Origin: Lepidodermella squamata
Taxonomy: Eukaryota; Animalia; Gastrotricha
Direction: 5' to 3'
Length of the DNA stretch: 64,000 nt
NCBI GenBank assembly: GCA_047495785.1
Contig: JBLDXI010000014.1
Span: 372,001 to 436,000 of the forward strand
Shown: piece after piece, positions 4,211 to 39,608 of the stretch
Layout: the number at the start of each line of letters is the position of its first letter
Numbering within the stretch: the stretch's first letter is position 1
Notes under the pieces: model-generated
Told to the model about the DNA's origin: nothing
Database searches by the model: none
What the model saw: the letters and a program-made list of their open reading frames with translations, nothing else
Made by a program: the position numbers and the translations under genes

Positions 4211-5975
4211 TGATATATCAAGCAAAAGTCTATCGCTAGTAAAAACTGTATGAATGTTTTTGCTTCAAAAAGTGTGCATATGGCGACGAGAAGCGCAGCA
4301 TCGATATGTTTTAGTGCGAAACGTTTTTCCGGTCGAAATGTATTGATCGCGCTTTATCGTCGAAATGAATTATTGATTGATTTTCATTACTAATTCATTT
4401 TGTATCGGTGATCTTTGTCGCCGGTAATGCGAATCCTGATGCAGTGATTTTTCTTGGAATGCGTCACGAAAAATTGAGCGACTTCTTCATCATTAGCCTG
4501 CTTAATTATATGGTGAATCAAATCGAATTTCTAGAAGGATAACAGCCTCAATATCATTATTCACATCAGGCGTCAAGTTGCCTCGGATATGTTAGCATCT
4601 AGGCCCTATTATAATTTCATCGGCCCAATCATGTAAAAAATGGTAAGCCCCACTCAAGTGAAGCCATTAATCCTCTCATAAGAACAAGGTAATAAGCTTC
4701 ATACTGATAATTAAATTTCGATTTTTTTTTCTATTCAAATGTACGCACTCTCGCTGCGTTACTGATTATCTTGCATGCCTTGACATCGATTATCTATTTG
4801 ACGTGCGTTCTGCTGCGTCTGAAGACAGCCTTCAGGTGCCGGCAATAAATTCGATTGATCCAGCCTAGCGTAATTCAGAGTCCCACAAGTGAGGGCGAAT
4901 CCATTGAGATTCGACCTTGCTCCATCGTGCCGGATTTGTAATACAAATTCTCCATGTCGCCCATGTATGAGGTGGGAGATCTTGTAACCGATAACAAGGC
5001 GAGCTTCCGTTTTTTTCAAGACCGAATTCTGATCAGGCCAACTTCCGAGAGTGGCATGTTTACAATAATATGCGATTGACTAAGCATTGGCTGAGTGGAT
5101 TAAAAAACGACAAGTATCGACTCAGCTGATGTATAGCCGCGTTATTAGCTACGCTTGAGCTCTCAACACTGAAAAAAAACGTCATTTTTACTATGTGCGC
5201 ATGCGCATAATTAAAAATTCGATATAAATGCCACACATCAAATAACGATTTTTTTATAATGGATTTGGAATCAGTTTTTTATTAAATAAAGCCAGAGACA
5301 ACTTTCAACATTAGACTCTGCAGATTTTTTGTCTGCGCGAATAAATTGGCTGGTCGTAGAGAACAAAAGTTATCCCTGCTGGGTGACGAAAATAGTCACG
5401 TAAATGAGCTAAATCCAATATAGGATAAATCGCCTCAACTAATTTAGCACGTTTTTAGCCGCACCAAATATATAAACTGCGCATCAGCTTTTTAGGTGGC
5501 TGCTATGATTTCGCCTGATAAAATTTGTGATTTCGAACTTTTTTCGGCTTGAATTTACTTCTGTTGGCAAATCGGCTCACACTTATTCGGGACATGGTTG
5601 CTCTGTTTCGCTGGGAAGTAATTACGTCATAGCGGCATTGCTCATATCCATTTAAATAATTAAATGATAACGCTGAGTTTATGAGCGGATTGCACTTCAA
5701 TTAATTCTGATTATACGAGGTCGGCGAAACTATCTGCTTACGTTGTTTGGACATTCTCGAACTCTCCCGTGAGTTTGATGGCTTCGAATTTCGCTTCCCA
5801 ACTTTATTGCGATAATAACTAGACGCGGACAAGGGCTTCTTGATTAATTTTTGCGCAATCAACCACCTCGAAAATCGTAAATTACGAAGATTATAAACCG
5901 CACTTCTCATTTTTTAGGCTAGATAATCTGTCAACATATCTTTTTACTAATTTGAAAACAATGTGATGAACAAAT

Positions 5976-7852
5976 ATGGCTGAAACTGGCGAAACCGCCT
6001 TATTAATGCTGATATCTACGATATCGGTAATCGGAGCGATTGGCAATTTGATCCTGCTGACTTTTTTCATCCGCAAAATGTGTAACCAAACTTCGTCCAA
6101 ATCCGGCAGTTTGCTGACCTCAATCTCGAATCAGCGAATGACAACAACCACGTTCATCCTAGTGCTGTCAGCTAACGACCTAGTCGCTTGCATTCTAGTC
6201 ATGCCGATGACAATTATTTACGAAACGTCGCCGAAGTTGATTTTCACGACAGATTTTTCGTGCAAATTCTACCACTTCGTAACAACATCGGTGATACCGT
6301 TTTCTGCTTTCTTGATCATCGCAATATCGGTCGATCGTTACCTGTGCATTATCCATCCGCTGCGCAACTTTCTGACCCCATGCCGAGCTAGATTTATCGT
6401 CATAATTCTTGCTGTTATATCATCTCTGATGGGAATTCTTGTCGCTATTAATTTTTCGGCGGCGAAATCAGACGAGCCATCACGTGCTGCCTTTGACGAG
6501 CGTCTGCTAACGCTGCAATATGGCGGAATTTCGAAGCCTGAGGTTCAACTCACCTCCACTGAGAGATATGACTTTACAAACGCCACGTCTTTCAAAAACA
6601 CGAAGGCCCCTAGAGTTAAAGCGAGCCGGAATTCGAATAGAACCTTGCGCGTTAAAACTTTCATGACTTCATCGACGACCACGCGAAAAATGGAGCCGAA
6701 AAGTAACCGATCGAGCCGCATATCAATGCTCGCCATGCTGCTGCAGACTAATTTCACGAGTCAGACGACGACTGTGGATTATGATGAGGACGATCATGAT
6801 CTTCACATGTGTATGCAGAGGCCGATGCTGGGCGAATTCTCCGAATTCTACCATTACATTCATAATGTGAGTCTCCAACTTTTTTATTAATAATTTTAAT
6901 TTATTTTTATTAAATTATTATAAAAATATTAATAATTTTTTTTATTAATTTTCAGGCTATTATTTTTGGCTCTGCTTTTACCGTTCCTTTCGTTCTCTAC
7001 GCTATCATTTACTGCCGAATTTCCAAGCGACAACTGCAAAAAGCACGGCGAAAGTCTGTGTCCACGCAAATTTTACTCCAGAATTCAACAATGCAAGTCC
7101 ATGACAGCAGTCGCGACGTCAGCTCGCCGCCGCTAAAACATCGCAACAGCTCAGTTGAGACCTACGAGGATATTAGCAGTGACAGCGCTGATGTCGCCAC
7201 AAATCGCTTATCGACAGTTCTGGAAGTGTCGGCGAGAAACAGCGCTGAAACTAGCGAGCAAGTTCAAATGCCATTGCCTCAGGTGATTGTGAATAACGAA
7301 CAGGAAAGCTCGGCGGGCGGCCTGAAAATGCGCGCTATGTTGCCTTGCAACCACACGTCATGTAGTCCGAAACGCAGCGTCAGTACGTTAGCTCTGAATA
7401 CACCTGCCGATGAATCCCTACGGAACAGCAGTAGTTTCTGCGTAACTGAAGCTACGGCTGCTAAATCTAGCAATTACGGGTCAACAGGGCGGAGTAATGG
7501 CTTGGCCCGAACTCCGTCCAAGGTTCGATTCAGTAGAAACATGGTCACAACGAGTCTCGTCAGGCGGAAGGGGTCTGTTATCAGTGTGACAACCCTGACG
7601 AGTGCTGAAAGGTCAGGCCAGGTCAGGCTGGCAGCTACTCTGTTCGTTGTCACTCTCGTTTTTGTCGTGTCCTACTTACCAGCGCTGATAGCCAACTACG
7701 TCCTGCCGAGCATGGATTCAGCGTGGAATCGATTCGCCTTTTACGTGTACTTTGCTAATAATGCAGCTAATCCTATTATCTACGGCGTGATGAATCGCCA
7801 GTTTCGCGAAGAACTCAAAAGCTGCATCGTTCCGAGCAAGACTAATTACTAA
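5976..7852 (+). CDS. Rhodopsin-family (class A) GPCR, peptide-receptor-like; 2 exons (intron 6867-6955)
   Basis: TM1 GN, TM2 LSANDL, TM3 DRY, TM7 NPIIY. The splice restores TM5 (HN|AIIFGSAFTVPFVLYAIIY). Confidence 0.9.
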
Positions 7853-8723: not shown

Positions 8724-11700
8724 CTACCGGCCTCGTTGAAATCTGCTATCTGCCGAGACTATTTTCTGACACACCTTGCACTTGGACGTGTGGTTGCGTC
8801 CGGTTCCGTGTTTGAGTTGCACCGATCGCGGCGTTTCGCCGATGCGGTCACCGTTGTTGTCCGCGCCACCGACCGACGCCAGCCAGAAACTGAGGTCGTT
8901 CTGGTACACGAAGCAAGTGCCGCGCGAACCACTGCATTCGACGAACGGCTGCGGCGTCCATTCGAGTAGACACGAGCCAGGGCTGTGCAGCAGCTGGCCG
9001 CCGCCTTGAGACCCAACACCAGTATGCTATAACAAAACAATATCAATTGTCACCTATTTTTTTAGGAATTTTAATCAAACCAACCATTACGAAGCTGAAC
9101 CCGCTCCACAATTCACGCCAGCCTTGCGGGCATTCAGCATGCGTGTGGTTGCGCTGAGAATGAACGGCAATGACGGCGGCTGGGACTTCGCACACGGAGC
9201 ATCGCGAAATCACCTCTCGCAGACCTGTGCCATTCACCGGCATGTTCAGGTTCGGCCCGTGTGTTGACAGCCAGTACGACTTGTCGTTGCGCGATGCGTA
9301 GTAGCACGTGTCGCGGTAGTCGCAGAACAAGAATGGCATTGTGCTGAACCGCCTCAAGCACGAGCCGGCCTTGCCAAGGTCCTGGTTGCCGGCATTCTCG
9401 TCACCCTGAAGGAACAACAGAGAGTAGCCATCCCACAGTTTCCTCTCGCCAGCCTTGCACTCTGGAACGACCTTCGACTGACTGTGGCGGACCAGCAGGA
9501 AACCGGCTTGGGGTACGAGACCAGCGTTGCCTTTTTCACCAGGGCGACCGGCGATACCTGGGCTGCCAGCGCGGCCAGCATCACCCTTATCACCCTTGGC
9601 GCCATCGACACCCGGTTGGCCATTCGTACCCGGCCGACCAGGATCACCCTTGGCACCTCGCTGACCAGGCGGGCCCTGTGGACCAGGAGGCCCGACCAGA
9701 CCGGCGTTGCCCTTGTCACCCTTCGCACCCGTCAGGCCTCGCTCGCCAAGATCGCCCTTATCACCCTTCGGACCAAGAGGACCTATTTCACCCGGTCGTC
9801 CAGGGTTGCCCCGATCACCCTTGTCTCCTCGCTCGCCTCTGACACCCTTTTCTCCGAGACGTCCAGGGACTCCCAGTTCACCCTTTTCACCAGGACGACC
9901 CGGCAGGCCGCGATCACCTTTATTGCCAGGGATGCCAGCTTCGCCCGGCTCACCAGCAGGACCAGTCATGCCTTTAGTTCCAGGAACACCTGGCCGGCCA
10001 GGCATACCAGCAATGCCTTTCTCGCCGCGTGGGCCAGTAAGACCTGCTTGGCCTTGGTCGCCTTTCAAACCGCGCTCGCCGCTTGGACCAGTCGAGCCTT
10101 TGTCACCCTTGGTACCTTTAACTTCAGTTGCCCTAGAAAGCAAAAGTAAAATCGATAGAAAAAAACCACAATGAAATTCGATAAATAATTACATCAAACC
10201 AGGAAGACCTCGATCGCCCTTCATGCCCGTGTCACCCTTGTCGCCGCGATCACCCTTCTGACCTGGCAGGCCAGTTGCACCCAAACGACCAGGTTCTCCA
10301 GGCTCTCCAGTAACAGTCTATTCAAGTGAAATGAATGCATTTTTATCGTGAATATTTTAAATACAACTTACCGGCCCGATCTCTCCCTTAACGCCTTGAT
10401 CTCCTTTAGGTCCAGGGTCGCCTTTCGGACCTGGCGGTCCGTTCTGGCCAGGAATACCACCATTGCCCTTGTCACCCTTGCCGCCCTTCATTCCGTTCAC
10501 ACCAGCATCGCCCTTTTCACCAATCGGTCCTGGTTGACCTGGTAGTCCTTGAGCACCTTTTAGACCAGGAATGCCGTCGTTTCCTCTGTCACCTCGCTCC
10601 CCAGGCATTCCAGGTCGTCCTGGCTCTCCACGGTCGCCCTCGCGTCCCAATTCACCCTTTTCACCTCTCTGACCAGGGACACCAGGCTGTCCTTGCAACC
10701 CAGGCATGCCACCGTCACCCTTTTCTCCGCGTTCACCAGTGTTGCCCTTGTTACCTTTCTCGCCGTTTTGACCTGAAATTGCATTCAAAAATTAAATCGA
10801 CAGGTTTAACATGACTGTGCTGTAATTACCTGGTCTACCAGGAGCACCAGGTTGGCCGGGTTCGCCAGTTGTACCAGCTTCGCCCTTTTCGCCTTGTTCT
10901 CCAATCGGACCTGTGAGGCCTACCGGTCCCTGATCACCCTTGTCGCCCTTGTCGCCAGAAACTCCACGCTGGCCTGGCATGCCGGGCGCACCTTTCTCTC
11001 CTCGAGGTCCACGGTCGCCTTTAACGCTGTTGCCAGGATCACCACGAGGGCCGGGTTCGCCGAGCGGACCAGGCTGACCCAAAGGTCCAGGCGATCCTGG
11101 GAGGCCAAGATCACCCTTGTCACCCTTCGATCCTCGAGATCCAGGTTGGCCACGATCACCTTTAGGTCCAGTTGGACCTAGCGGGCCCCTCTCGCCAGGA
11201 GAACCAGCTATGCCCTGCTGACCAGGAGCACCCGGGGGCCCGGCTTGGCCATCGCGACCAGATTCACCACGATCACCTTTGTCGCCCTTGGATCCTTTAT
11301 TGCCCTTCGGTCCTTGGTCGCCTCGCTCACCGAGATGGCCTTTGTCTCCGGGCTTTCCTGGGAGTCCAGGGTTTCCAGAAGGACCATCACTAAAAGATAA
11401 TGAGTTGTCATGGTCAATTGACATCTCAAACAATGATTAGCTTACTTTCCACGATCACCTTTAGGTCCACGAGCACCAGGAAGGCCGGGAGCGCCAGCAT
11501 CTCCAGGTCGCCCTCTGTTTCCTTTCAGGCCCATATCACCCTTCTTGCCGAGAAGGCCGGCCTCGCCTAAGATAAAGAAATTATTGGAGACTAAGTTAGG
11601 CCGTGTAAAACAAATTTACCCTTATTTCCTTTATCGCCACGTTCGCCAGGCTGCCCAGCAGTACCTTTCTCGCCAGAATCACCTTTCGGGCCTTGCTTGC

Positions 11701-33478: not shown

Positions 33479-35602
33479 TCAACTCGTGCATTCAAGTTCT
33501 AGATGGAACGTCGAAGGCTTGGCCGCCGGCTCTTGACTAACTTCAAATTCTCTCTCCAGACCAGTTTCCTTAGCAGTTTCTTTCTGCGGTTCCGATTGAG
33601 TCGGTTTATTTTCTGGGGGTTTTGGATCAGGAGGCGGGTTCGGTTTAGCAACATGCTGCGGTGGCGAGGCATTAGTCGGCGGAGCGGAGGCAACTTTGAC
33701 TGACCTCCTGTACTTCCAAAAAATGAGGTTTGACTTCGCTAGTGCTGCTGCAACAACGATGGACACAACAGCAAAGACAATTGCTGCAATGACACCAGGC
33801 GTCATCATGTTTTCCACGCTCTGCCATGAAGCTCTGTAAGAGCCATACAGTGGCTGGTCATCAGCTACGGGGTAGACGTACATCGGCCGCGGGCTGGTCG
33901 GGTAAAAATTGTCGTTGTAAAAGTATAAAAAATCAAAATTAGGCTGGCTTGGGTCATTTCTACCGCCAAATACTGGATCGCGTCGTTGAGCTTCGGCTAC
34001 CTGTGCCAAATAGACAGAATTTGAGCCAGAACCTGGGTTAACAATAGTAGTAGACGACCCAGCAGGTCCTGCAGCCCCTGCAGTGGTCGCAACGGTTGTA
34101 GTCCTAAAATAGGAAATTCGAACACATTTTTTCAATTTTTTTCATTTAATTTTACGATTTCGTGGTTGCAGTCGTTGTTGACGTTGATGTCGTTGAGGTG
34201 GTAGTCGTCGTAACCCAGCTGTCGACCTGGCACACATAGCATCGCGTTGACTCGCGGACGTCGCTTATCCAGCCACCGAAGTTGCTCGAAGGCCAGTTTG
34301 GCTTGGTAAGAGACGTGTAAAGCGAATCAGCCCGAACGAAGAAAGCATCGTTCGATCCAGACGGATGGCCACCAACTACGTCAAATGCGTCGCTTGAACT
34401 CACTACATCTTGAGCAGCGTTCGACCAAACCCAACGGCTGGTTGAACCTTGAAAGAATGTGTGAATTACTAAAATTCGATAATTGTTTAAAATTCGTACT
34501 GTTAAATTCAAGACCGATCCAATAATCGATCCCTTCTAAATAAGCTTTAACTTTCGCGAAGATGAGCAGCGCCTCAGTTCTCGGTATCCAAAGGGTCGGT
34601 GAGTAAGACGCAGCCAGAGTGTTACACGAAGCTTTCGCCTGGTTAAAGGACAAGGGGCTTCGCATGAATCGGAAGCACTTGTCTGTGTACTTTTCCCAAC
34701 CAGGTGGGCAAGACATGCACGCTCGAGAGTACTCGCATATGTAATTTAGGGTCTGCGAATACGAGTTGGAAATGATCAGCCGCTTGTTTGCTATGTAGCC
34801 GACAAATTCCGAGCCAGTGTACGCGTTTTGCCATAATAGCCACGGGGCAGCGACTGTATCAACGTAACTCGAAGACCCATTGAAGTTATTTCCGAGGACA
34901 GCCGTAGAGCCATCCTTCATTGGTTGATAAATTCGTAAAAAATAATCAAACAATTTTGGCAACTTGCCATCCACCGCCATTTATTGTTGGGATCCGCTGA
35001 GAAACCAAACGGGATGGTCCAAGTTGCGCTAGACTGACCAGCTGAGCGGCGAGCCCAGTCTTGAATACCTAAATTTTTAATAATTTACCGCATTTCAGGA
35101 TAGGAATGAGGATCTTTACCAAGCCAATAGTAGTCAAAACTTGAGCCTGCTACAGTTGTGGACACCCAGCTGAATTCAGCAGCGCCGTTGGGTGACCACA
35201 GATGCCCTCCATATTTTACACAATCCGCCACAGCTAAAAGATGCGTTTTTGGAGACCTGTGTAGTTAATTTTGAGGCATAATTATTCATATTAGGTCAGA
35301 CGATTGTTATTACGAGGAAACGACAAAATAGCAACTGTCGTAGCACGAGCTGTAATGGGTCCAAGGTGCTGTTGATACACATGCAGCTAAAAATTGTAGG
35401 TCAAATGTAACTTATCTTAAATAAAATGGGAATATTTACGTGTAGAGACGCAGGCTGAAGAGCAACTTTGACTTGAGGTGACCGCTGGAAGAAATATAAG
35501 TAAGCATTAATCAGCAAATTGAGGAATACCGAGATCATTTATACCGATCACGGAAGCAAGAATAACCAACTCATAGGTAGCCTGGAATAGATGCCTAAAC
35601 AT
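33479..35602 (-). CDS. Type I membrane protein with two C-type lectin-like domains and a Thr-rich stalk
   Basis: Signal exon MFRHLFQATYELVILASVI; CTLD1 (SCYFV..CVKYGGHL..YWLG..YICE); CTLD2 (CPPGWEKYTDKCF..YWIGL..CYVCQ); TM; Pro-rich tail. Confidence 0.85.
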
Positions 35603-35941
35603 TTTTGGAATAGTTGTTCATTCTAGCATTCTTAAGGCTGCGAGTATCGCGCACTTCTCAACCTTCCAGACGGCTGTTCCGATCGATGCGAACCCATGTG
35701 TTTAGCGACGCGTGCCACGTTACAGATCGATCATAGTTCTTTATGCGCATAAATGATTAATTTCGCAATTGAATAAGTCTTGAAATAGAGATATCAATAA
35801 TAAACCTGGACCGCCTGCTTCTCGAAGTAAAATTCCTCAGATTGAAAGAAAATATTTTAACCTAATTATGCTCTTTATTATCAGTAATTTTGGATAATAA
35901 GTTAAAAGTGTTAATCTCGATGTTGTTCCTTATTCCAGATG

Positions 35942-37166
35942 CTACTTTTTCGTGGCGATGTAATTGCGCCATCCTCCAAACTTGGTTATCTCCAGCATGT
36001 TTTCGCAAAGGACCGGCTCGCCAAGTACACCAAGGACTTCAGTTCCATCGGCCAATTTCATTTTCCCGATACTGAGGCCTGGTGGCTCTTTCAACAAAAT
36101 ATCAGCCAAACCTTCAGCCGGAACCTCCCAAACTTCGACAGCCATTGCAGACCCGCCGTTACTAACTCCGACAGCAGCAGGGTGAACATCTTTGATTGAA
36201 TAAAGACGGTAACATGGCTCGGTTGTAGCTTCGAAGAGAAACCGAGCTCCGACATTCAGAAGGTTAGGATTCAGTTCCAAGCCACGCATCAGTGTGCCGT
36301 TGACGGCTAGCTTTACGGCGCGAGAATCGGAGTTCGCCATGTGCCCTGGGGATGAGCTAAGTTGATGTAAAGCTTTCAGCAAGGAGCCGGAATCCGAAAC
36401 AGACCCAAAAACCCCTCTGAAAAATTTATAGCTGATTCTGATAAGTCAACAATATAATTTATCTCATTCGAGATAATGCAGTAAAGATAGTCCTTATCGG
36501 CTCTGACTCATTACGTACTCACCCTTGCATTTTCACCATCTTTATTGCAGCCAGGTGATTTCCCATATCAGTGGCTCCGCAACAGTCCTCGAGTAGCAAG
36601 CACTCGAAGCCGCGATCATTTGCATCTCGCATTGTCGTGTGAACGCAGACATCCGTCGTAACGCCGCAGATGATCAAGCTCTTTATTCCTCGAGTTCTTA
36701 AAATGAGCTCCAAGTCTGTTGCGTAGAATGAGCCCTTTCCAGGCTTGTCCACAATGATTTCATTGTCGAGAGGTCGCAATTCATCAATGATTTCCCAACC
36801 TCGCTCGCCCCGCACCAAAATTCGCCCAGCCGGGCCGCGGTCGCCAATGCCGGCACCAATCGCCTTACTTCTCAGCAGTTTGTTGCCAGGGCAGTCGGAT
36901 AAATCAGCTCGATGACCTTCGCGCGTGTGAATGATCGTAAATTCTGGTATAGCCCGTAAAGCTGCGAGAATTTTCTGAATAGGTTCAATTGGCTTTCGCA
37001 GGGCGTCGACGTCATAGCCCATCATGTCAACGTAGCCACCTTTGCCACAAAAATCGTGCTGCATATCGATGACAATAAGAGCAGTTTGGCTAGGCTGTAA
37101 TCCATCTTTGATTGGCCATACGTAAGGATCTGCCTCAACTTTGATGTCATTTTTACAGCCAGCCAT
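35942..37166 (-). CDS. biuH: Biuret hydrolase (isochorismatase family) fused to an allophanate-hydrolase C-terminal-like domain; 372 aa, intron 36417-36522
   Basis: [34 protein letters not shown] and [13 protein letters not shown]|GVFGSV match BiuH as recalled. The second domain [45 protein letters not shown] matches the AH C-terminal domain. Confidence 0.88.
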
Positions 37167-37403
37167 TTTCAGGATTTAAGGCTTTATGTTTGCTACCTTG
37201 ATAATTCTAGTATTATTTCACCACAAACAGTAAATTTTTATAACACACATATAACACCTGAAGCCCGTAGCCCTCAATCAGGTTTAAATTTTTTGCGCAT
37301 GGGGGACTTTTTTATTTGCCATTATAATGAAAGTATAGTGATGTGGAAGCAAGAGACCAATTTATGTAGTTCAATGAAAAGCATCTACAAAAACCCAACA
37401 AAA

Positions 37404-39608
37404 TCACAGGTTCAGCTTGAAAATGGTTTTCCAATCGAACGGAGCCGATCTTTTCTCTGTGTAGCGTTTTTTAGGCCCCGTTACACCTGAGGGTGCCGTA
37501 TTCACAGCGTCGTACGGCCTTTCGATTCGAATGTTGTCTGGATTATAAAATGTATAAAAACAATGGATTCAGGCTTAAATTATTACCGGATACTGGAGCG
37601 AAGTTGCACACCTAGTTTTATTGAAAATTGATTAAAATAGGAAACCTGAAGAAAATTGTATTCCTTACAATGATGCTAATGGAATCTCGACAACGTGCTT
37701 TGCCACAGCCAACAAAGCGCGTGTGATCCTGTATCATTTGAACGTAGTTTGAAGCGTTGGATGCGGGATTGTAAAGGCCCCATTTCCAGTTTGTCCTCTC
37801 AGCCGCCCACTTGTCTATGACAGTTCTCGTCGAGACCAGCCCCTTGGTCATATATACTACAAGCAAATGAAATAGCAAAGAGGAAATCCTCCATCAGGCT
37901 ACAAATACTTGTTTGGCCAACGTTTCGCCAAGCCTCGCCTCTTGCGGGCAAACTTCGATCGGAAGAGCGGGAAAGGCCGGTTGGACATGCAGCTGCCCAG
38001 CTATAAATTGCAACTAGTATTATACCCCTCAGTATATATCTTAGCTTCTCGGCATACCGTTCAGCTTCGGCGACAAGATCCGTGTCCCATTGCAATGTTT
38101 GCATTGCCTTAGCAGCCGGTTCAACGTTTTCTGTGACAAAAATATGGTGTTCAGAAGACGATAGAAAACGAGAAACCTACTTCTCCAATAGTTAAGACGT
38201 TCAAGCGCCGAATCTACTGGAACCTTGATCAACTCTTCAAGCTGAGGCGAATCAGGTTGGCAAAGGGAGTGAGACGGCTGAAGACCGTACTTCTTGCACA
38301 ATGCGGGTTGTGAAGTTGACGGCTAGCAACAAGAAACTTTTTACCATCATCAAATCGATCAAAAATGCTGACATACAGCTGGGGCTAAATAGCTTTGCTT
38401 CACTTTTTCTACGAAAGTTGAGGGCGCAATTTTGGTGTCTTTCGCTAGATAAGGCTTGGCATACGGTCCGCTGTTATCTTCCCCGACATTTCCACCAGGT
38501 CCATAGTCACAAACCTGTAAAGAGAGGAAGTCGCGGTTCGGAATGAGGGTGAAATTTGAAAAATTACTATGAATGTTCTCCACTTCCCTTTGCACTTAGC
38601 TTTCGCACACCTAAGCAAAAGGAAGTTATTTACGAGCAACGGAAGAAGCAACTTTAATACCCTACGAAACGCGATTTCGCTGAAATTATTTGTGTGTAGT
38701 GACCGACAACTTTTTCAGGGTTCTCAATGCCGTATCGCCAGTCGAAGCGCTCCGCGGCCCACGAGTCGATTGCATCAATGAACGAAGAGTCATCGCTGAA
38801 CCAATACACTATGAAATGCATCAAATATTAGACTTGTTTTTCGGGTCATTTCAAGCATAATACGGTTTTGCCCGACCCAGTTCCATCCTCGATGTTTAAG
38901 GGCTCTGTTATCGCTTTCGTCATGACCCGTCGCACAAGTTATTGCCCAACCCTCAGCTACCATTGCGAGATCTTCGTCATACTGCATTTTCGGCATATCA
39001 GCAGCGGGAGGATTGACGCTGGCTTTAACAAAAAAATATCTTGGCAATTGGAAAATACCAATCAAAATTTGACGCAAACCTCGCCAATTATTATGAGCTG
39101 TAACGATCGATTGCTTCGTCGACTCGCCTAATGTTTCAAGCGAGACGAAGTTTTGAGATGGTTTCTTGCACATTGAATGCCTCTTGGGTAAATTGTAGAC
39201 TTGGCAAACTCTTTGACGCTCGGAAGCATTGCTGTCATCGTTTTGCCGCTAGTTCAGAAAAAAGGTTCAGTAATGTTTCATTCATGCTTCGTGTACCTTC
39301 TGTTTTGACGAGCCTGAACTCTGACAGATAGGTGGTTCATTCCAGACTCCATTCGGTAGGCAAAACACGCTAGCCTGTGGCTTTTCACTGCTGTCCCCGT
39401 TGCATCGGTAAGAAACTGCATCGACTTGAACTGTCGAGCCATCGGCGAGCTGGTAATCTTGCTTGAAAATTCTAGTTATCTCGCCGCCCTCGACCAAGGG
39501 AACCTCGTCACAGCTTATGACTGATTGCAAAAAACGCGGCTGGAGATTAGCATTTATCTCCACAGTCAACAATAACAGGGCTATTAAAGGCGAACTAAAT
39601 CGAAACAT
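37404..39608 (-). CDS. Secreted Sushi(CCP) + two CAP/SCP domain protein
   Basis: Signal; Sushi (C..YRC..C...G.WNEPPIC); CAP1 (AHNNWR, VGQN, GHYTQII, VCDYGPGGN); degenerate CAP2 (SNYVQMI, VGCG, VCNFAP). Confidence 0.8.

What the first reader, a model, noticed from the sequence alone, without database searches (positions are those of the whole stretch)
35942..37166. Animal gene encoding a bacterial-type biuret hydrolase fused to an allophanate-hydrolase C-terminal domain: probable HGT-derived operon fusion with an intron
Seen: a single 372 aa reading frame forms once the 106 nt GT-AG intron (36417-36522) is removed. The intron sits inside the conserved KMQG|GVFG motif, and the gene lies among unmistakably metazoan genes. 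Established: the N-terminal domain has the isochorismatase Asp-Lys-Cys triad (IDMQ, DKPGK, TTDVC) and the C-terminal KMQGGVFG typical of BiuH, which converts biuret to allophanate plus ammonia in microbial s-triazine/biuret catabolism. The C-terminal domain resembles the C-domain of allophanate hydrolase, the next enzyme of that pathway. Inference: two adjacent microbial genes were transferred and fused. The linker still contains a Met ([17 protein letters not shown]) where a stand-alone second gene would start. This would give an animal a biuret/allophanate nitrogen-salvage or detoxification activity not normally attributed to metazoans.
Basis: partly seen in the sequence, partly recalled or inferred. 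Interest (0 to 1): 0.88.

Follow-up and report, generated by a model that had tools for sequence, protein, structure and literature searches.

The report
Animal biuret hydrolase fusion from bacteria
A small invertebrate carries two working-looking, intron-bearing copies of a bacterial biuret-hydrolase gene fused to a small bacterial helper domain, which gives an animal an unusual nitrogen-breakdown enzyme and hints at what that uncharacterised helper does.

Summary
Removing a 106-nt GT-AG intron (36417-36522) joins 37166-36523 and 36416-35942 on the minus strand into a 372-aa frame.

- **N-terminal domain.** Residues 1-235 are a BiuH-type isochorismatase-like cysteine hydrolase, 70-76% identical to bacterial BiuH. 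The triad, the substrate residues and the BiuH-versus-TrtA discriminator residues are all present.
- **C-terminal domain.** Residues 249-372 match Pfam AH_C. They belong to the stand-alone "allophanate hydrolase-related protein" clade (E. coli c4763, PDB 5C5Z), not to true allophanate hydrolases. There is no amidase domain, and the His conserved in true AH C-domains is Leu here.
- **Host gene, not contamination.** It lies between spliced C-type lectin and CAP genes in a window that also holds collagen IV. A 90%-identical paralogue sits 245 kb away with the intron at the same site. dN/dS is 0.14, and GC3 matches host genes.
- **Bacterial context.** In bacteria the two families share biuret/triuret and carbamate-kinase operons.
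- **Other fusions.** They have fused independently in algae, Chromera and bacteria, mostly in the opposite order.
- **Origin.** Bacterial origin is well supported for BiuH (clade support 95/91). The donor and the timing of the fusion are unresolved.

The scan's first stage also noted the paralogue separately. I rate this a new variant of a known kind, of moderate to high interest.

The parts
36523..37166 (-). Exon 1: start codon and residues 1-214 plus 2 nt; BiuH-type isochorismatase domain
   Evidence: The ORF is 36519-37166. PF00857 scores 6.9e-42. The NCBIfam BiuH equivalog scores 349 bits. Identity to bacterial BiuH is 70-76%. The best PDB match is R. leguminosarum BiuH 6azo/6azq at 324 bits.
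36417..36522 (-). Spliceosomal intron, 106 nt, phase 2, GTGAGT...TTTTCAG, inside the KMQG|GVFG motif
   Evidence: A DNA contig covers it exactly, while the probable RNA run has zero depth there. The paralogue has an 84-nt intron at the same site with diverged sequence.
35942..36416 (-). Exon 2: end of the BiuH domain, linker, AH_C domain, and stop TAA at 35942-35944
36645..36647 (-). Codon of catalytic Cys174. The other key codons are D34 37065-37067, K141 36744-36746, K144 36735-36737 and Q214 36525-36527.
   Evidence: The residue roles are taken from PMC7948467.
36317..36355 (-). Inter-domain linker [13 protein letters not shown], with Met241 at 36338-36340
   Evidence: It aligns to the C-termini of bacterial BiuH and the N-termini of stand-alone AH_C proteins. 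The Met is Ile in the paralogue.
35945..36316 (-). AH_C domain (residues 249-372) of the stand-alone c4763/5C5Z-like clade
   Evidence: PF21986 scores 3e-38. 5C5Z scores 132 bits against 44-59 bits for true AH. Clade-specific residues are and the tree.
35874..35879 (-). AATAAA polyadenylation signal, 63 nt after the stop
   Evidence: RNA-run depth ends between 35840 and 35973 and is zero from 35572 to 35839.

Best explanation
This is a genuine gene of the animal that descends from bacterial DNA acquired by horizontal transfer. Since then it has gained a spliceosomal intron and host-like codon composition, has been duplicated, and has been kept under purifying selection.

It encodes a cytosolic two-domain enzyme.

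- **Domain 1 (residues 1-235)** is a biuret amidohydrolase (BiuH, EC 3.5.1.84). It would use the Asp34-Lys141-Cys174 triad, with Gln214 supplied across the dimer interface, to hydrolyse biuret to allophanate plus ammonia.
- **Domain 2 (residues 249-372)** belongs to the stand-alone 'allophanate hydrolase-related protein' family (E. coli c4763). In bacteria this family is an accessory of biuret/triuret operons and of carbamate-kinase/AllFGH operons.

My inference is that domain 2 handles the unstable N-carboxylated product, decarboxylating allophanate to urea plus CO2. This would parallel the N-carboxycarbamate step ascribed to the C-domain of true allophanate hydrolase. The genome shows no AtzF-type allophanate hydrolase and no urease. 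The net reaction would then be biuret to NH3 + CO2 + urea, which is detoxification or partial nitrogen salvage of biuret-type ureides from the diet or from oxidative purine breakdown.

**Shown:** gene structure, domain identities, catalytic residues, genomic integration, the paralogue, selection, bacterial affinity of the BiuH domain, and recurrent gene-neighbourhood and fusion linkage of the two families.

**Inferred:** splicing of this intron, the substrate, the chemistry of domain 2, and whether the two parts arrived together.
For: **Structure and domains**
- Gene structure and domain calls.
- The gene keeps 102 of the 104 positions that are at least 97% conserved in 145 bacterial BiuH. D34, F39, K141, K144, C174 and Q214 are present, as are the BiuH-type discriminators Y45, Y51, S146 and D172 (residue roles from PMC7948467).
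- PDB ranking is BiuH 324 bits, far above TrtA at 193 bits.

**Phylogeny**
- The BiuH part falls in the BiuH clade, apart from the TrtA-like paralogues (100*). It sits inside a bacterial/metagenomic subclade that includes a Nitrospirales MAG (95/91*).
- The AH_C part falls in the stand-alone clade, not with the amidase-linked AH domains.

**Host integration**
- The assembly is 121 Mb in 151 contigs, and the contig holding the window spans at least 656 kb.
- Metazoan genes flank the gene on both sides, with RNA-supported GT-AG introns.
- The sequence is held by runs from two studies, dated 2015 and 2024.
- The paralogue shares the intron position.
- dN/dS is 0.136 overall and 0.075 for the AH_C domain, with dS 0.40. 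GC3 is 0.50 against 0.45-0.55 in host genes.

**Functional coupling of the two families**
- 28 of 80 bacterial AH_C loci carry a BiuH within the 8 kb of flank fetched on each side. None of those 28 has an amidase or an AtzH/TrtB-like gene by tblastn.
- The E. coli operon reads cysteine hydrolase, DUF2877, FdrA, DUF1116, carbamate kinase, c4763, and is matched in 1560 of 5426 genomes.
- Carbamate kinase-AH_C fusions are abundant.
- Independent isochorismatase/AH_C fusions occur in Spirogloea, other algae, Chromera and a bacterium.

**Own genome**
- There is no allophanate hydrolase (the best hit is the GatA orthologue), no urease alpha and no Cupin_7.
Against: - No contig crossing the exon junction was recovered, and the 'RNA' label of run X2 is a guess.
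- No enzymology exists for any stand-alone AH_C protein in the papers I could read. The AtzF C-domain is dispensable for amidase activity and may only organise oligomers (PMC3944691).
- The His conserved in AH C-domains is Leu here, so the analogy in chemistry is weak.
- The window copy has Gly at a position that is Arg in 96% of stand-alone AH_C proteins.
- The AH_C tree does not resolve a donor.
- The AU test does not reject one clade of this gene with the algal fusions (p = 0.21).
- The closest BiuH relatives have no AH_C neighbour, so joint transfer is unproven.
- The NCBIfam BiuH score for exon 1 alone (349) is under the 370 cut-off. The last 17 profile positions are encoded in exon 2.
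Confidence: 0.72

Rival explanations
1. The gene arrived already fused. The donor was either a bacterium with an isochorismatase-AH_C fusion gene or another eukaryote (alga or protist) that carried such a fusion. On this view there was no fusion of two operon genes inside the animal.
For: - A true bacterial fusion in the same order exists: P0359, 363 aa, found in three contigs with bacterial neighbours.
- Chromera velia has the same domain order.
- The AU test does not reject a clade of this gene with the eukaryotic fusions (p = 0.21).
Against: - The hydrolase part of P0359 is TrtA-like and only 53% identical. Chromera's is 49%. Free-standing bacterial BiuH reaches 70-76%.
- All algal fusions have the opposite order, AH_C then BiuH.
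- The linker keeps a full BiuH C-terminus and a Met-led AH_C N-terminus about 6 residues apart, as expected from loss of a stop codon between adjacent genes. L095 shows such an adjacent pair.
Confidence: 0.15
2. The gene is an old eukaryotic gene inherited vertically and lost in most animals, so no transfer into this lineage took place.
For: - Fusions of the same two families exist in several eukaryotic groups.
- GC3 and the intron are host-like, and the paralogues are old (dS 0.40).
Against: - The BiuH part sits in a bacterial subclade with 95/91 support, apart from the algal clade.
- The domain order differs from the algal genes.
- Searches of 5.8 billion proteins and 1.84 billion cluster representatives returned no other animal-like homologue.
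- Identity to bacteria (75-76%) is higher than to any eukaryote (at most 70% for BiuH, at most 62% for AH_C).
Confidence: 0.05
3. The gene is bacterial contamination or a chimeric assembly, not part of the animal genome.
For: - Identity to bacterial proteins is very high.
- Short-read contigs break at the gene's ends.
Against: - There is a canonical intron at the same codon in two copies 245 kb apart on one contig.
- GC3 equals that of host genes.
- A 1370-nt DNA contig joins the gene's 3' UTR to the lectin gene. The contig breaks coincide with paralogue branch points: the loose end at 35943 equals the paralogue's 3' flank.
- An AATAAA signal is present.
- The sequence is present in two independent studies.
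Confidence: 0.02
4. The hydrolase domain acts on a ureide other than biuret, such as triuret, carboxybiuret or another small amide. The AH_C domain may be structural (oligomerisation) rather than catalytic.
For: - BiuH-like enzymes of archaeal ammonia oxidisers are suggested to take triuret, carboxybiuret or biuret (PMC12625717).
- The AtzF C-domain affects oligomeric state, not catalysis (PMC3944691).
- The paralogue carries Q214S and the TrtA-type S146A, which hints at diverging specificities.
- The window copy has lost the conserved Arg298 of AH_C.
Against: - All four BiuH-versus-TrtA discriminator residues are BiuH-type in the window copy.
- AH_C has the lowest dN/dS of the gene, 0.075.
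- The repeated independent fusion of AH_C to BiuH, carbamate kinase and Cupin_7 argues for a catalytic or channelling role.
Confidence: 0.2

Closest known systems
Bacterial biuret hydrolase BiuH (Rhizobium leguminosarum bv. viciae 3841, PDB 6AZO/6AZQ; NCBIfam NF050097)
   Same: It has the same fold, about 70% identity over 205 residues, an identical triad, the same substrate-binding Phe/Lys/Gln, and the BiuH-specific second-shell residues. It groups with BiuH and not with TrtA in trees.
   Different: Here it is encoded in an animal nucleus, interrupted by an intron, and extended by a C-terminal AH_C domain. There is no linked Bmp-type ABC transporter, AtzF or TrtB. W98L and I169V occur at otherwise invariant positions.
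E. coli c4763 (PDB 5C5Z), annotated by PGAP as 'allophanate hydrolase-related protein'; stand-alone AH_C proteins of cyanobacteria and Verrucomicrobia
   Same: It has the same domain with 56-75% identity, and the same clade-specific NGTLMRG, DxHP, E325, K333 and C352 residues.
   Different: Those proteins are free-standing, about 130 aa long, and sit next to carbamate kinase, Cupin_7 or BiuH. Here the domain is fused behind BiuH, and Arg298 is Gly in the window copy.
Allophanate hydrolase (AtzF; the AH part of yeast urea amidolyase; PDB 4GYR, 4ISS)
   Same: The C-terminal domain belongs to the same Pfam family (PF21986) and shares a GGCT-like fold signature.
   Different: There is no amidase-signature domain. 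Identity is only 36-42%. The conserved GAHL His is replaced (NGTL, Leu at the His site). It is a separate clade. It is not an allophanate hydrolase.
Algal AH_C-BiuH fusion proteins (Spirogloea muscicola SM000137S00473 and relatives) and Chromera velia Cvel_13520
   Same: The same two families are fused in one eukaryotic polypeptide.
   Different: In the algae the order is reversed. Chromera has the same order but a divergent hydrolase (49% identity). None is the nearest relative of the animal gene in either domain.
Whitefly urea carboxylase and allophanate hydrolase acquired from bacteria (PMC10836729)
   Same: It is a precedent for an animal using horizontally acquired bacterial genes of the urea/allophanate branch of nitrogen metabolism (abstract only).
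   Different: The enzymes are different (biotin carboxylase and amidase-type AtzF), the host is different, and there is no BiuH and no such fusion.

Membership tests
BiuH, biuret amidohydrolase (isochorismatase-like cysteine hydrolase) | Isochorismatase-like domain | tested here: met
   PF00857 scores 6.9e-42 over residues 28-212.
BiuH, biuret amidohydrolase (isochorismatase-like cysteine hydrolase) | Asp-Lys-Cys catalytic triad plus Phe41/Lys145/Gln215 equivalents (R. leguminosarum numbering) | tested here: met
   D34, K141, C174, F39, K144 and Q214 are present. Their roles are taken from PMC7948467.
BiuH, biuret amidohydrolase (isochorismatase-like cysteine hydrolase) | BiuH-consensus residues at the positions that distinguish BiuH from triuret hydrolase TrtA (Tyr, Tyr, Ser, Asp) | tested here: met
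   Y45, Y51, S146 and D172 are present. The paralogue has Ala at 146 and Ser at 214.
BiuH, biuret amidohydrolase (isochorismatase-like cysteine hydrolase) | Score above the NCBIfam equivalog cut-off (370 bits) | tested here: inconclusive
   Exon 1 alone scores 349 bits and covers profile positions 1-204 of 221. The rest is in exon 2, and the spliced protein could not be submitted by reference.
BiuH, biuret amidohydrolase (isochorismatase-like cysteine hydrolase) | Phylogenetic placement inside BiuH, apart from TrtA-like paralogues | tested here: met
   The split has 100* support.
BiuH, biuret amidohydrolase (isochorismatase-like cysteine hydrolase) | Hydrolysis of biuret to allophanate and ammonia | not testable with these tools
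   This needs a recombinant enzyme assay.
Allophanate hydrolase (AtzF / AH) | Amidase-signature N-terminal domain | tested here: not met
   The gene has no PF01425 match. TIGR02713 matches only positions 431-563.
Allophanate hydrolase (AtzF / AH) | C-domain with the conserved G-A-H-L motif | tested here: not met
   His is present in 88% of amidase-linked AH_C domains. It is Leu in 100% of 80 stand-alone proteins and in both animal copies. That this His is catalytic is from my memory of Fan et al. 2013, a paper that is not held.
Stand-alone AH_C / 'allophanate hydrolase-related protein' (c4763-like) | PF21986 domain with the clade motifs VNGTLMRG, D-x-H-P, E325, K333 and C352 | tested here: met
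   The best PDB match is 5C5Z.
Stand-alone AH_C / 'allophanate hydrolase-related protein' (c4763-like) | Free-standing protein of about 130 aa | tested here: not met
   Here it is fused behind BiuH. Fusions to other partners are common in this clade.
Horizontally acquired, domesticated animal gene | Physically integrated among host genes | tested here: met
Horizontally acquired, domesticated animal gene | Nested within a prokaryotic clade | tested here: met
   This is met for BiuH, with 95/91* support. AH_C is unresolved. The AU test against a clade with the algal fusions gives p = 0.21.
Horizontally acquired, domesticated animal gene | Absent from other animals | tested here: inconclusive
   No animal-like homologue appeared in four large protein searches. 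However, the host lineage is unidentified and may be poorly sampled, and this genome's own records are withheld.
Horizontally acquired, domesticated animal gene | Expressed, spliced and under purifying selection | tested here: inconclusive
   Selection is met, with dN/dS 0.136. Expression and splicing are supported only by exon-limited depth in a run guessed to be RNA, with no junction contig.

The most novel reading that the evidence does not exclude
The c4763-like AH_C domain may be a missing enzyme of ureide catabolism: an amidase-independent processor of N-carboxylated intermediates (allophanate, carboxybiuret, carbamate). On this reading it replaces AtzF and TrtB in many bacteria. Its repeated fusion to BiuH in an animal, algae, a chromerid and bacteria would mark a self-contained biuret-to-urea/ammonia module. 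The animal would have captured this module to dispose of biuret and triuret that arise from oxidative urate breakdown or from the diet.
Probability: 0.3. Interest if true: 0.78.

Novelty: new variant of a known kind. Interest (0 to 1): 0.62.

Why it matters
- **New enzyme for animals.** Functional bacterial-to-animal transfers are known, but the 45 held papers that name the enzyme gave no sign of it in an animal. This would add a ureide-degrading step to metazoan nitrogen metabolism, next to the whitefly urea carboxylase/AtzF case.
- **A functional hint for an uncharacterised family.** The gene acts as a 'Rosetta stone'. It joins several independent fusions and the bacterial operons in tying the widespread 'allophanate hydrolase-related protein' family (present in about 29% of complete E. 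coli genomes) to the biuret/allophanate/carbamate steps. That gives a concrete, testable function for the family.
- **A test case for divergence after duplication.** The two diverging copies differ at key residues of different domains. One has lost the active-site Gln and the other has lost a conserved Arg of AH_C. This offers a small natural experiment in functional divergence after transfer.

Tried and rejected
1. **Junction reads.** Read laying on X1-X3 gave no contig across the 36416/36523 junction. Only contigs, not raw reads, were available, so the splice remains inferred.
2. **AH_C as TrtB.** I tested whether AH_C is the known carboxybiuret decarboxylase TrtB. This is rejected: TrtB is treated as kin of AtzH and HpxZ (PMC12625717 supplement), and AtzH-like is a different Pfam family (PF11533).
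3. **P0329.** It looked like a bacterial BiuH-AH_C fusion, but it is a frameshifted gene call over two adjacent genes. I kept it only as evidence of adjacency.
4. **Identifying the host phylum.** Two atlas searches (eIF2A, collagen IV) showed only 'eukaryote/metazoan'. Run and organism names are coded.
5. **Contig look-ups.** The look-up of encoding contigs had no record for P0132 or P0136.
6. **Papers not held.** Fan et al. 2013, Aukema et al. 2020 and Kim et al. 2015 are not held. Statements about the AH C-domain's N-carboxycarbamate decarboxylation and its catalytic His rest on my memory, plus the one-line statement in PMC5770610.
7. **AU test.** The test for a clade of the animal gene with the eukaryotic AH_C-BiuH fusions gave p = 0.21, so that clade is not rejected.
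8. **AH_C tree.** With 127 columns it is too short to name a donor.
9. **Not done.** The spliced 372-aa protein was never submitted whole, because it has no single reference. No structure or complex prediction was run, because no claim here depends on one.
Full report
**Gene structure.** On the minus strand an ATG at 37166, preceded by an in-frame TAA 12 nt upstream, opens a frame that runs to 36523. There the sequence reads GG|GTGAGTACG. At 36417 the sequence ...AATTTTTCAG| ends, and the frame resumes at 36416 and runs to a TAA at 35944-35942. Removing the 106 nt gives 1119 nt and 372 codons. The intron is 33% G+C against 49-51% for the exons. It is in phase 2 and splits the conserved KMQG|GVFG motif. 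An AATAAA lies 63 nt after the stop.

**Domains.**
- Exon 1 matches Pfam Isochorismatase (6.9e-42) and the NCBIfam equivalog 'biuret amidohydrolase BiuH' (349 bits). The cut-off is 370, but the last 17 profile positions are in exon 2.
- Its best solved relatives are R. leguminosarum BiuH (324 bits) and Rhodococcus BiuH. Triuret hydrolase TrtA scores 193 bits and RutB 97 bits.
- Against 145 bacterial BiuH sequences, the window copy keeps 102 of the 104 positions that are at least 97% conserved. These include D34, F39, K141, K144, C174 and Q214. They also include the four residues that Tassoulas et al. use to tell BiuH from TrtA (Y45, Y51, S146, D172) (PMC7948467).
- Exon 2 carries the end of that domain, a short linker and a Pfam AH_C domain (3e-38).

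**What the C-domain really is.**
- Its best solved match is not an allophanate hydrolase. It is 5C5Z, a 137-aa stand-alone protein (132 bits), while true allophanate hydrolases score 44-59 bits.
- 5C5Z is E. coli c4763 (Kim et al. 2015, cited in PMC7558591). Its sequence equals the E. coli 'allophanate hydrolase-related protein' that I fetched.
- An exhaustive HMMER search of 1.84 billion cluster representatives gave mostly proteins of about 130 aa at 55-67% identity as nearest kin. Full-length allophanate hydrolases were at 36-42%.
- A scan of species-representative bacterial genomes found stand-alone genes up to 75% identical, in Verrucomicrobiales, Chthoniobacteraceae and many cyanobacteria.
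- In a tree the animal domain falls in the stand-alone clade, but the 127 columns do not resolve a donor.
- Column by column, amidase-linked AH_C domains have V-x-G-A-H-L (His in 88%), whereas all 80 stand-alone proteins and both animal copies have V-N-G-T-L-M-R-G.
There is no amidase domain, and a residue conserved in AH C-domains is replaced.

**It is a host gene.**
- The genome is 121 Mb in 151 contigs, and the window lies in contig C14.
- The neighbouring genes are a C-type lectin and two CAP-domain genes. The window also holds collagen IV, a rhodopsin-type GPCR, VIT/VWA and eIF2A genes.
- In run X2 (2015, guessed to be RNA) both neighbours show joints of 49-60 nt with GT-AG ends on the minus strand.
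- In the same run, depth over the gene is confined to the two exons. It is zero over 36376-36509, 35572-35839 and 37180-37313.
- The DNA run X1 covers the intron exactly, and a 1370-nt contig joins the 3' UTR to the lectin gene.
- A second copy lies at C14:653692-654891, 245 kb away. It is 90% identical and has the same two domains. Its intron is 84 nt, sits at exactly the same codon and has a diverged interior.
- The loose end reported at 35943 in X1 and X2 is the paralogue's 3' flank, so both copies are present in both runs.
- Between the copies dS = 0.40 and dN/dS = 0.136 (BiuH 0.157, AH_C 0.075). GC3 is 0.50, within the 0.45-0.55 of five host ORFs.
- Contamination or chimerism is therefore very unlikely, and both domains are under constraint.

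**Origin.**
- The 120 best BiuH hits are bacterial or metagenomic, at 68-76% identity.
- In a careful ML tree (94 rows, LG+C20+F+G4) the two animal copies (100/100) sit in a subclade with 95/91 support. The other members are 13 bacterial or metagenomic sequences, including a Nitrospirales MAG.
- That subclade is apart from the clade of eukaryotic AH_C-BiuH fusions.
- In the three loci examined for two members of that subclade (L090 and L091 for the Nitrospirales protein P0008, L092 for P0002), BiuH ends an ABC-permease-permease-Bmp transporter operon and has no AH_C neighbour.
- The AU test does not reject a single clade of the animal genes with the eukaryotic fusions (p = 0.21), so the separation is supported but not decisive.
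- Whole-protein searches designed to rank two-domain proteins first found no further BiuH-then-AH_C protein resembling the animal gene. The host lineage is unidentified and may be thinly sampled, so absence from other animals remains open.

**How the fusion may have arisen.**
- The linker reads like two complete gene ends. [15 protein letters not shown] aligns with the last residues of free BiuH proteins.
- [16 protein letters not shown] looks like the Met-led N-terminus of stand-alone AH_C proteins. About six residues lie between the two.
- One bacterial locus (L095) has exactly that arrangement: the BiuH stop is followed within a few bases by the AH_C start, with Cupin_7 upstream. It had been miscalled as a fusion because of a frameshift.
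- Among the 80 AH_C loci, 28 hold a BiuH within the 8 kb of flank fetched on each side. Seven have it immediately downstream (the reverse order) and none immediately upstream.
- A genuine bacterial fusion in the animal's order exists (P0359), but its hydrolase is TrtA-like.
- The Met is Ile in the paralogue.
- I rate 'adjacent pair transferred, then fused by stop loss' as the most likely route, at about 45%. Separate arrival, or arrival already fused, is not excluded.
- The intron lies inside the BiuH domain and not at the domain boundary, so it was gained after transfer and did not mediate the fusion.

**Function.** The two families are linked in many independent ways.

1. A conserved operon occurs in Verrucomicrobia and cyanobacteria: Bmp-type binding protein, two permeases, BiuH, ABC ATPase, a second TrtA-like isochorismatase, Cupin_7 and AH_C. 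The BiuH-containing AH_C loci lack amidase and AtzH/TrtB-like genes by tblastn.
2. In E. coli, c4763 follows carbamate kinase in the operon cysteine hydrolase, DUF2877, FdrA, DUF1116, carbamate kinase, c4763, cytosine permease. A probe from that operon matches 1560 of 5426 complete genomes. This is a paralogue of the AllFGH/AllK oxalurate system described in PMC12625717.
3. The domain is fused most often to carbamate kinase, and also to Cupin_7 and DUF1116.
4. It is fused to BiuH in Spirogloea muscicola and other eukaryotic transcriptomes, in the order AH_C then BiuH. It is fused to a divergent isochorismatase in Chromera velia.

All partners make or consume N-carboxylated or carbamoyl compounds. 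In true allophanate hydrolase the N and C domains catalyse sequential reactions (PMC5770610). From memory of Fan et al. 2013, the C-domain there decarboxylates N-carboxycarbamate.

I therefore propose that the animal's AH_C domain decarboxylates the allophanate made by its BiuH domain, yielding urea and CO2. Less likely, it acts one step earlier, on carboxybiuret. The genome has no allophanate hydrolase (the best hit is the GatA orthologue), no urease alpha and no Cupin_7, so the fusion protein would be the whole pathway. A purely structural role, as suggested for AtzF's C-terminal fragment (PMC3944691), is the main alternative.

**The two copies differ at key sites.** The window copy has an intact BiuH site but Gly at AH_C position 298, which is Arg in 96% of stand-alone proteins. 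The paralogue keeps that Arg but has Ser for the active-site Gln214 and the TrtA-type Ala for Ser146. Both copies are under purifying selection, so this may reflect diverging specificities rather than decay.

**Verdict.** It needs correction on the identity of the C-domain, on the expected activity, and on uniqueness. The 45 held papers that name biuret hydrolase gave no sign of the enzyme in an animal. The case is a new variant of a known kind. Its main value is as one of several independent fusions that assign a pathway context to an uncharacterised protein family. The scan's first stage had also noted the paralogue as a separate finding.

Noticed in passing
G000:C14:653692-654891 (+), locus L003: This is a paralogue of the fusion gene, 374 aa and 90% identical, with an 84-nt intron at the same codon. 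It carries Ser for the active-site Gln214 and the TrtA-type Ala for Ser146. It keeps the AH_C Arg that the window copy has lost.
   Followed up: partly
L008:82-8372 and L015:4688-11754: A conserved bacterial operon is present in Verrucomicrobiales and a cyanobacterium. It holds a Bmp-type ABC transporter, BiuH, a second TrtA-like isochorismatase, Cupin_7 and stand-alone AH_C, with no allophanate hydrolase or TrtB. L008 also has a 578-aa ORF (5871-7607) with no Pfam hit, which recurs in 11 of the 80 loci.
   Followed up: partly
L099:8942-16155 (E. coli NZ_AP022171.1): An E. coli operon reads cysteine hydrolase, DUF2877, FdrA, DUF1116, carbamate kinase, c4763-type 'allophanate hydrolase-related protein', cytosine permease. 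A probe from it matches 1560 of 5426 complete genomes. It looks like a second, uncharacterised AllFGH/AllK-type ureide pathway.
   Followed up: partly
proteins P0277-P0394: The c4763-like AH_C domain is most often fused to carbamate kinase (proteins of about 455 aa). It is also fused to Cupin_7, DUF1116 and a methyltransferase.
   Followed up: no
proteins P0399, P0400, P0404, P0136, P0398, P0401-P0403, P0423; P0397, P0001: Eukaryotic AH_C-BiuH fusions occur in Spirogloea muscicola and other EukProt or Logan transcriptomes. Tandem BiuH plus TrtA-like proteins occur in Chromochloris zofingiensis and in one Logan contig. These suggest repeated uptake of this bacterial module by algae.
   Followed up: partly
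L095:8001-9083: The called 360-aa 'fusion' P0329 is a frameshift artefact over two adjacent genes. Many neighbouring calls on that contig are also fragmentary.
   Followed up: yes
L010, L013, L018, L026: MAGs labelled Bifidobacteriaceae and Klebsiella carry BiuH/AH_C genes that group with Verrucomicrobia in the trees. The bin labels look doubtful.
   Followed up: no
window 37300-39200 (-) and 34380-35600 (-): Two CAP-domain genes lie in tandem upstream of the gene, and C-type lectin exons lie downstream. Each has several introns of 49-60 nt that are supported by joints in run X2.
   Followed up: partly
window 9043-10143 (-): This is the last exon of a type IV collagen gene (collagen repeats plus two C4 domains), in the G+C-richest part of the window (53-56%).
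   Followed up: no
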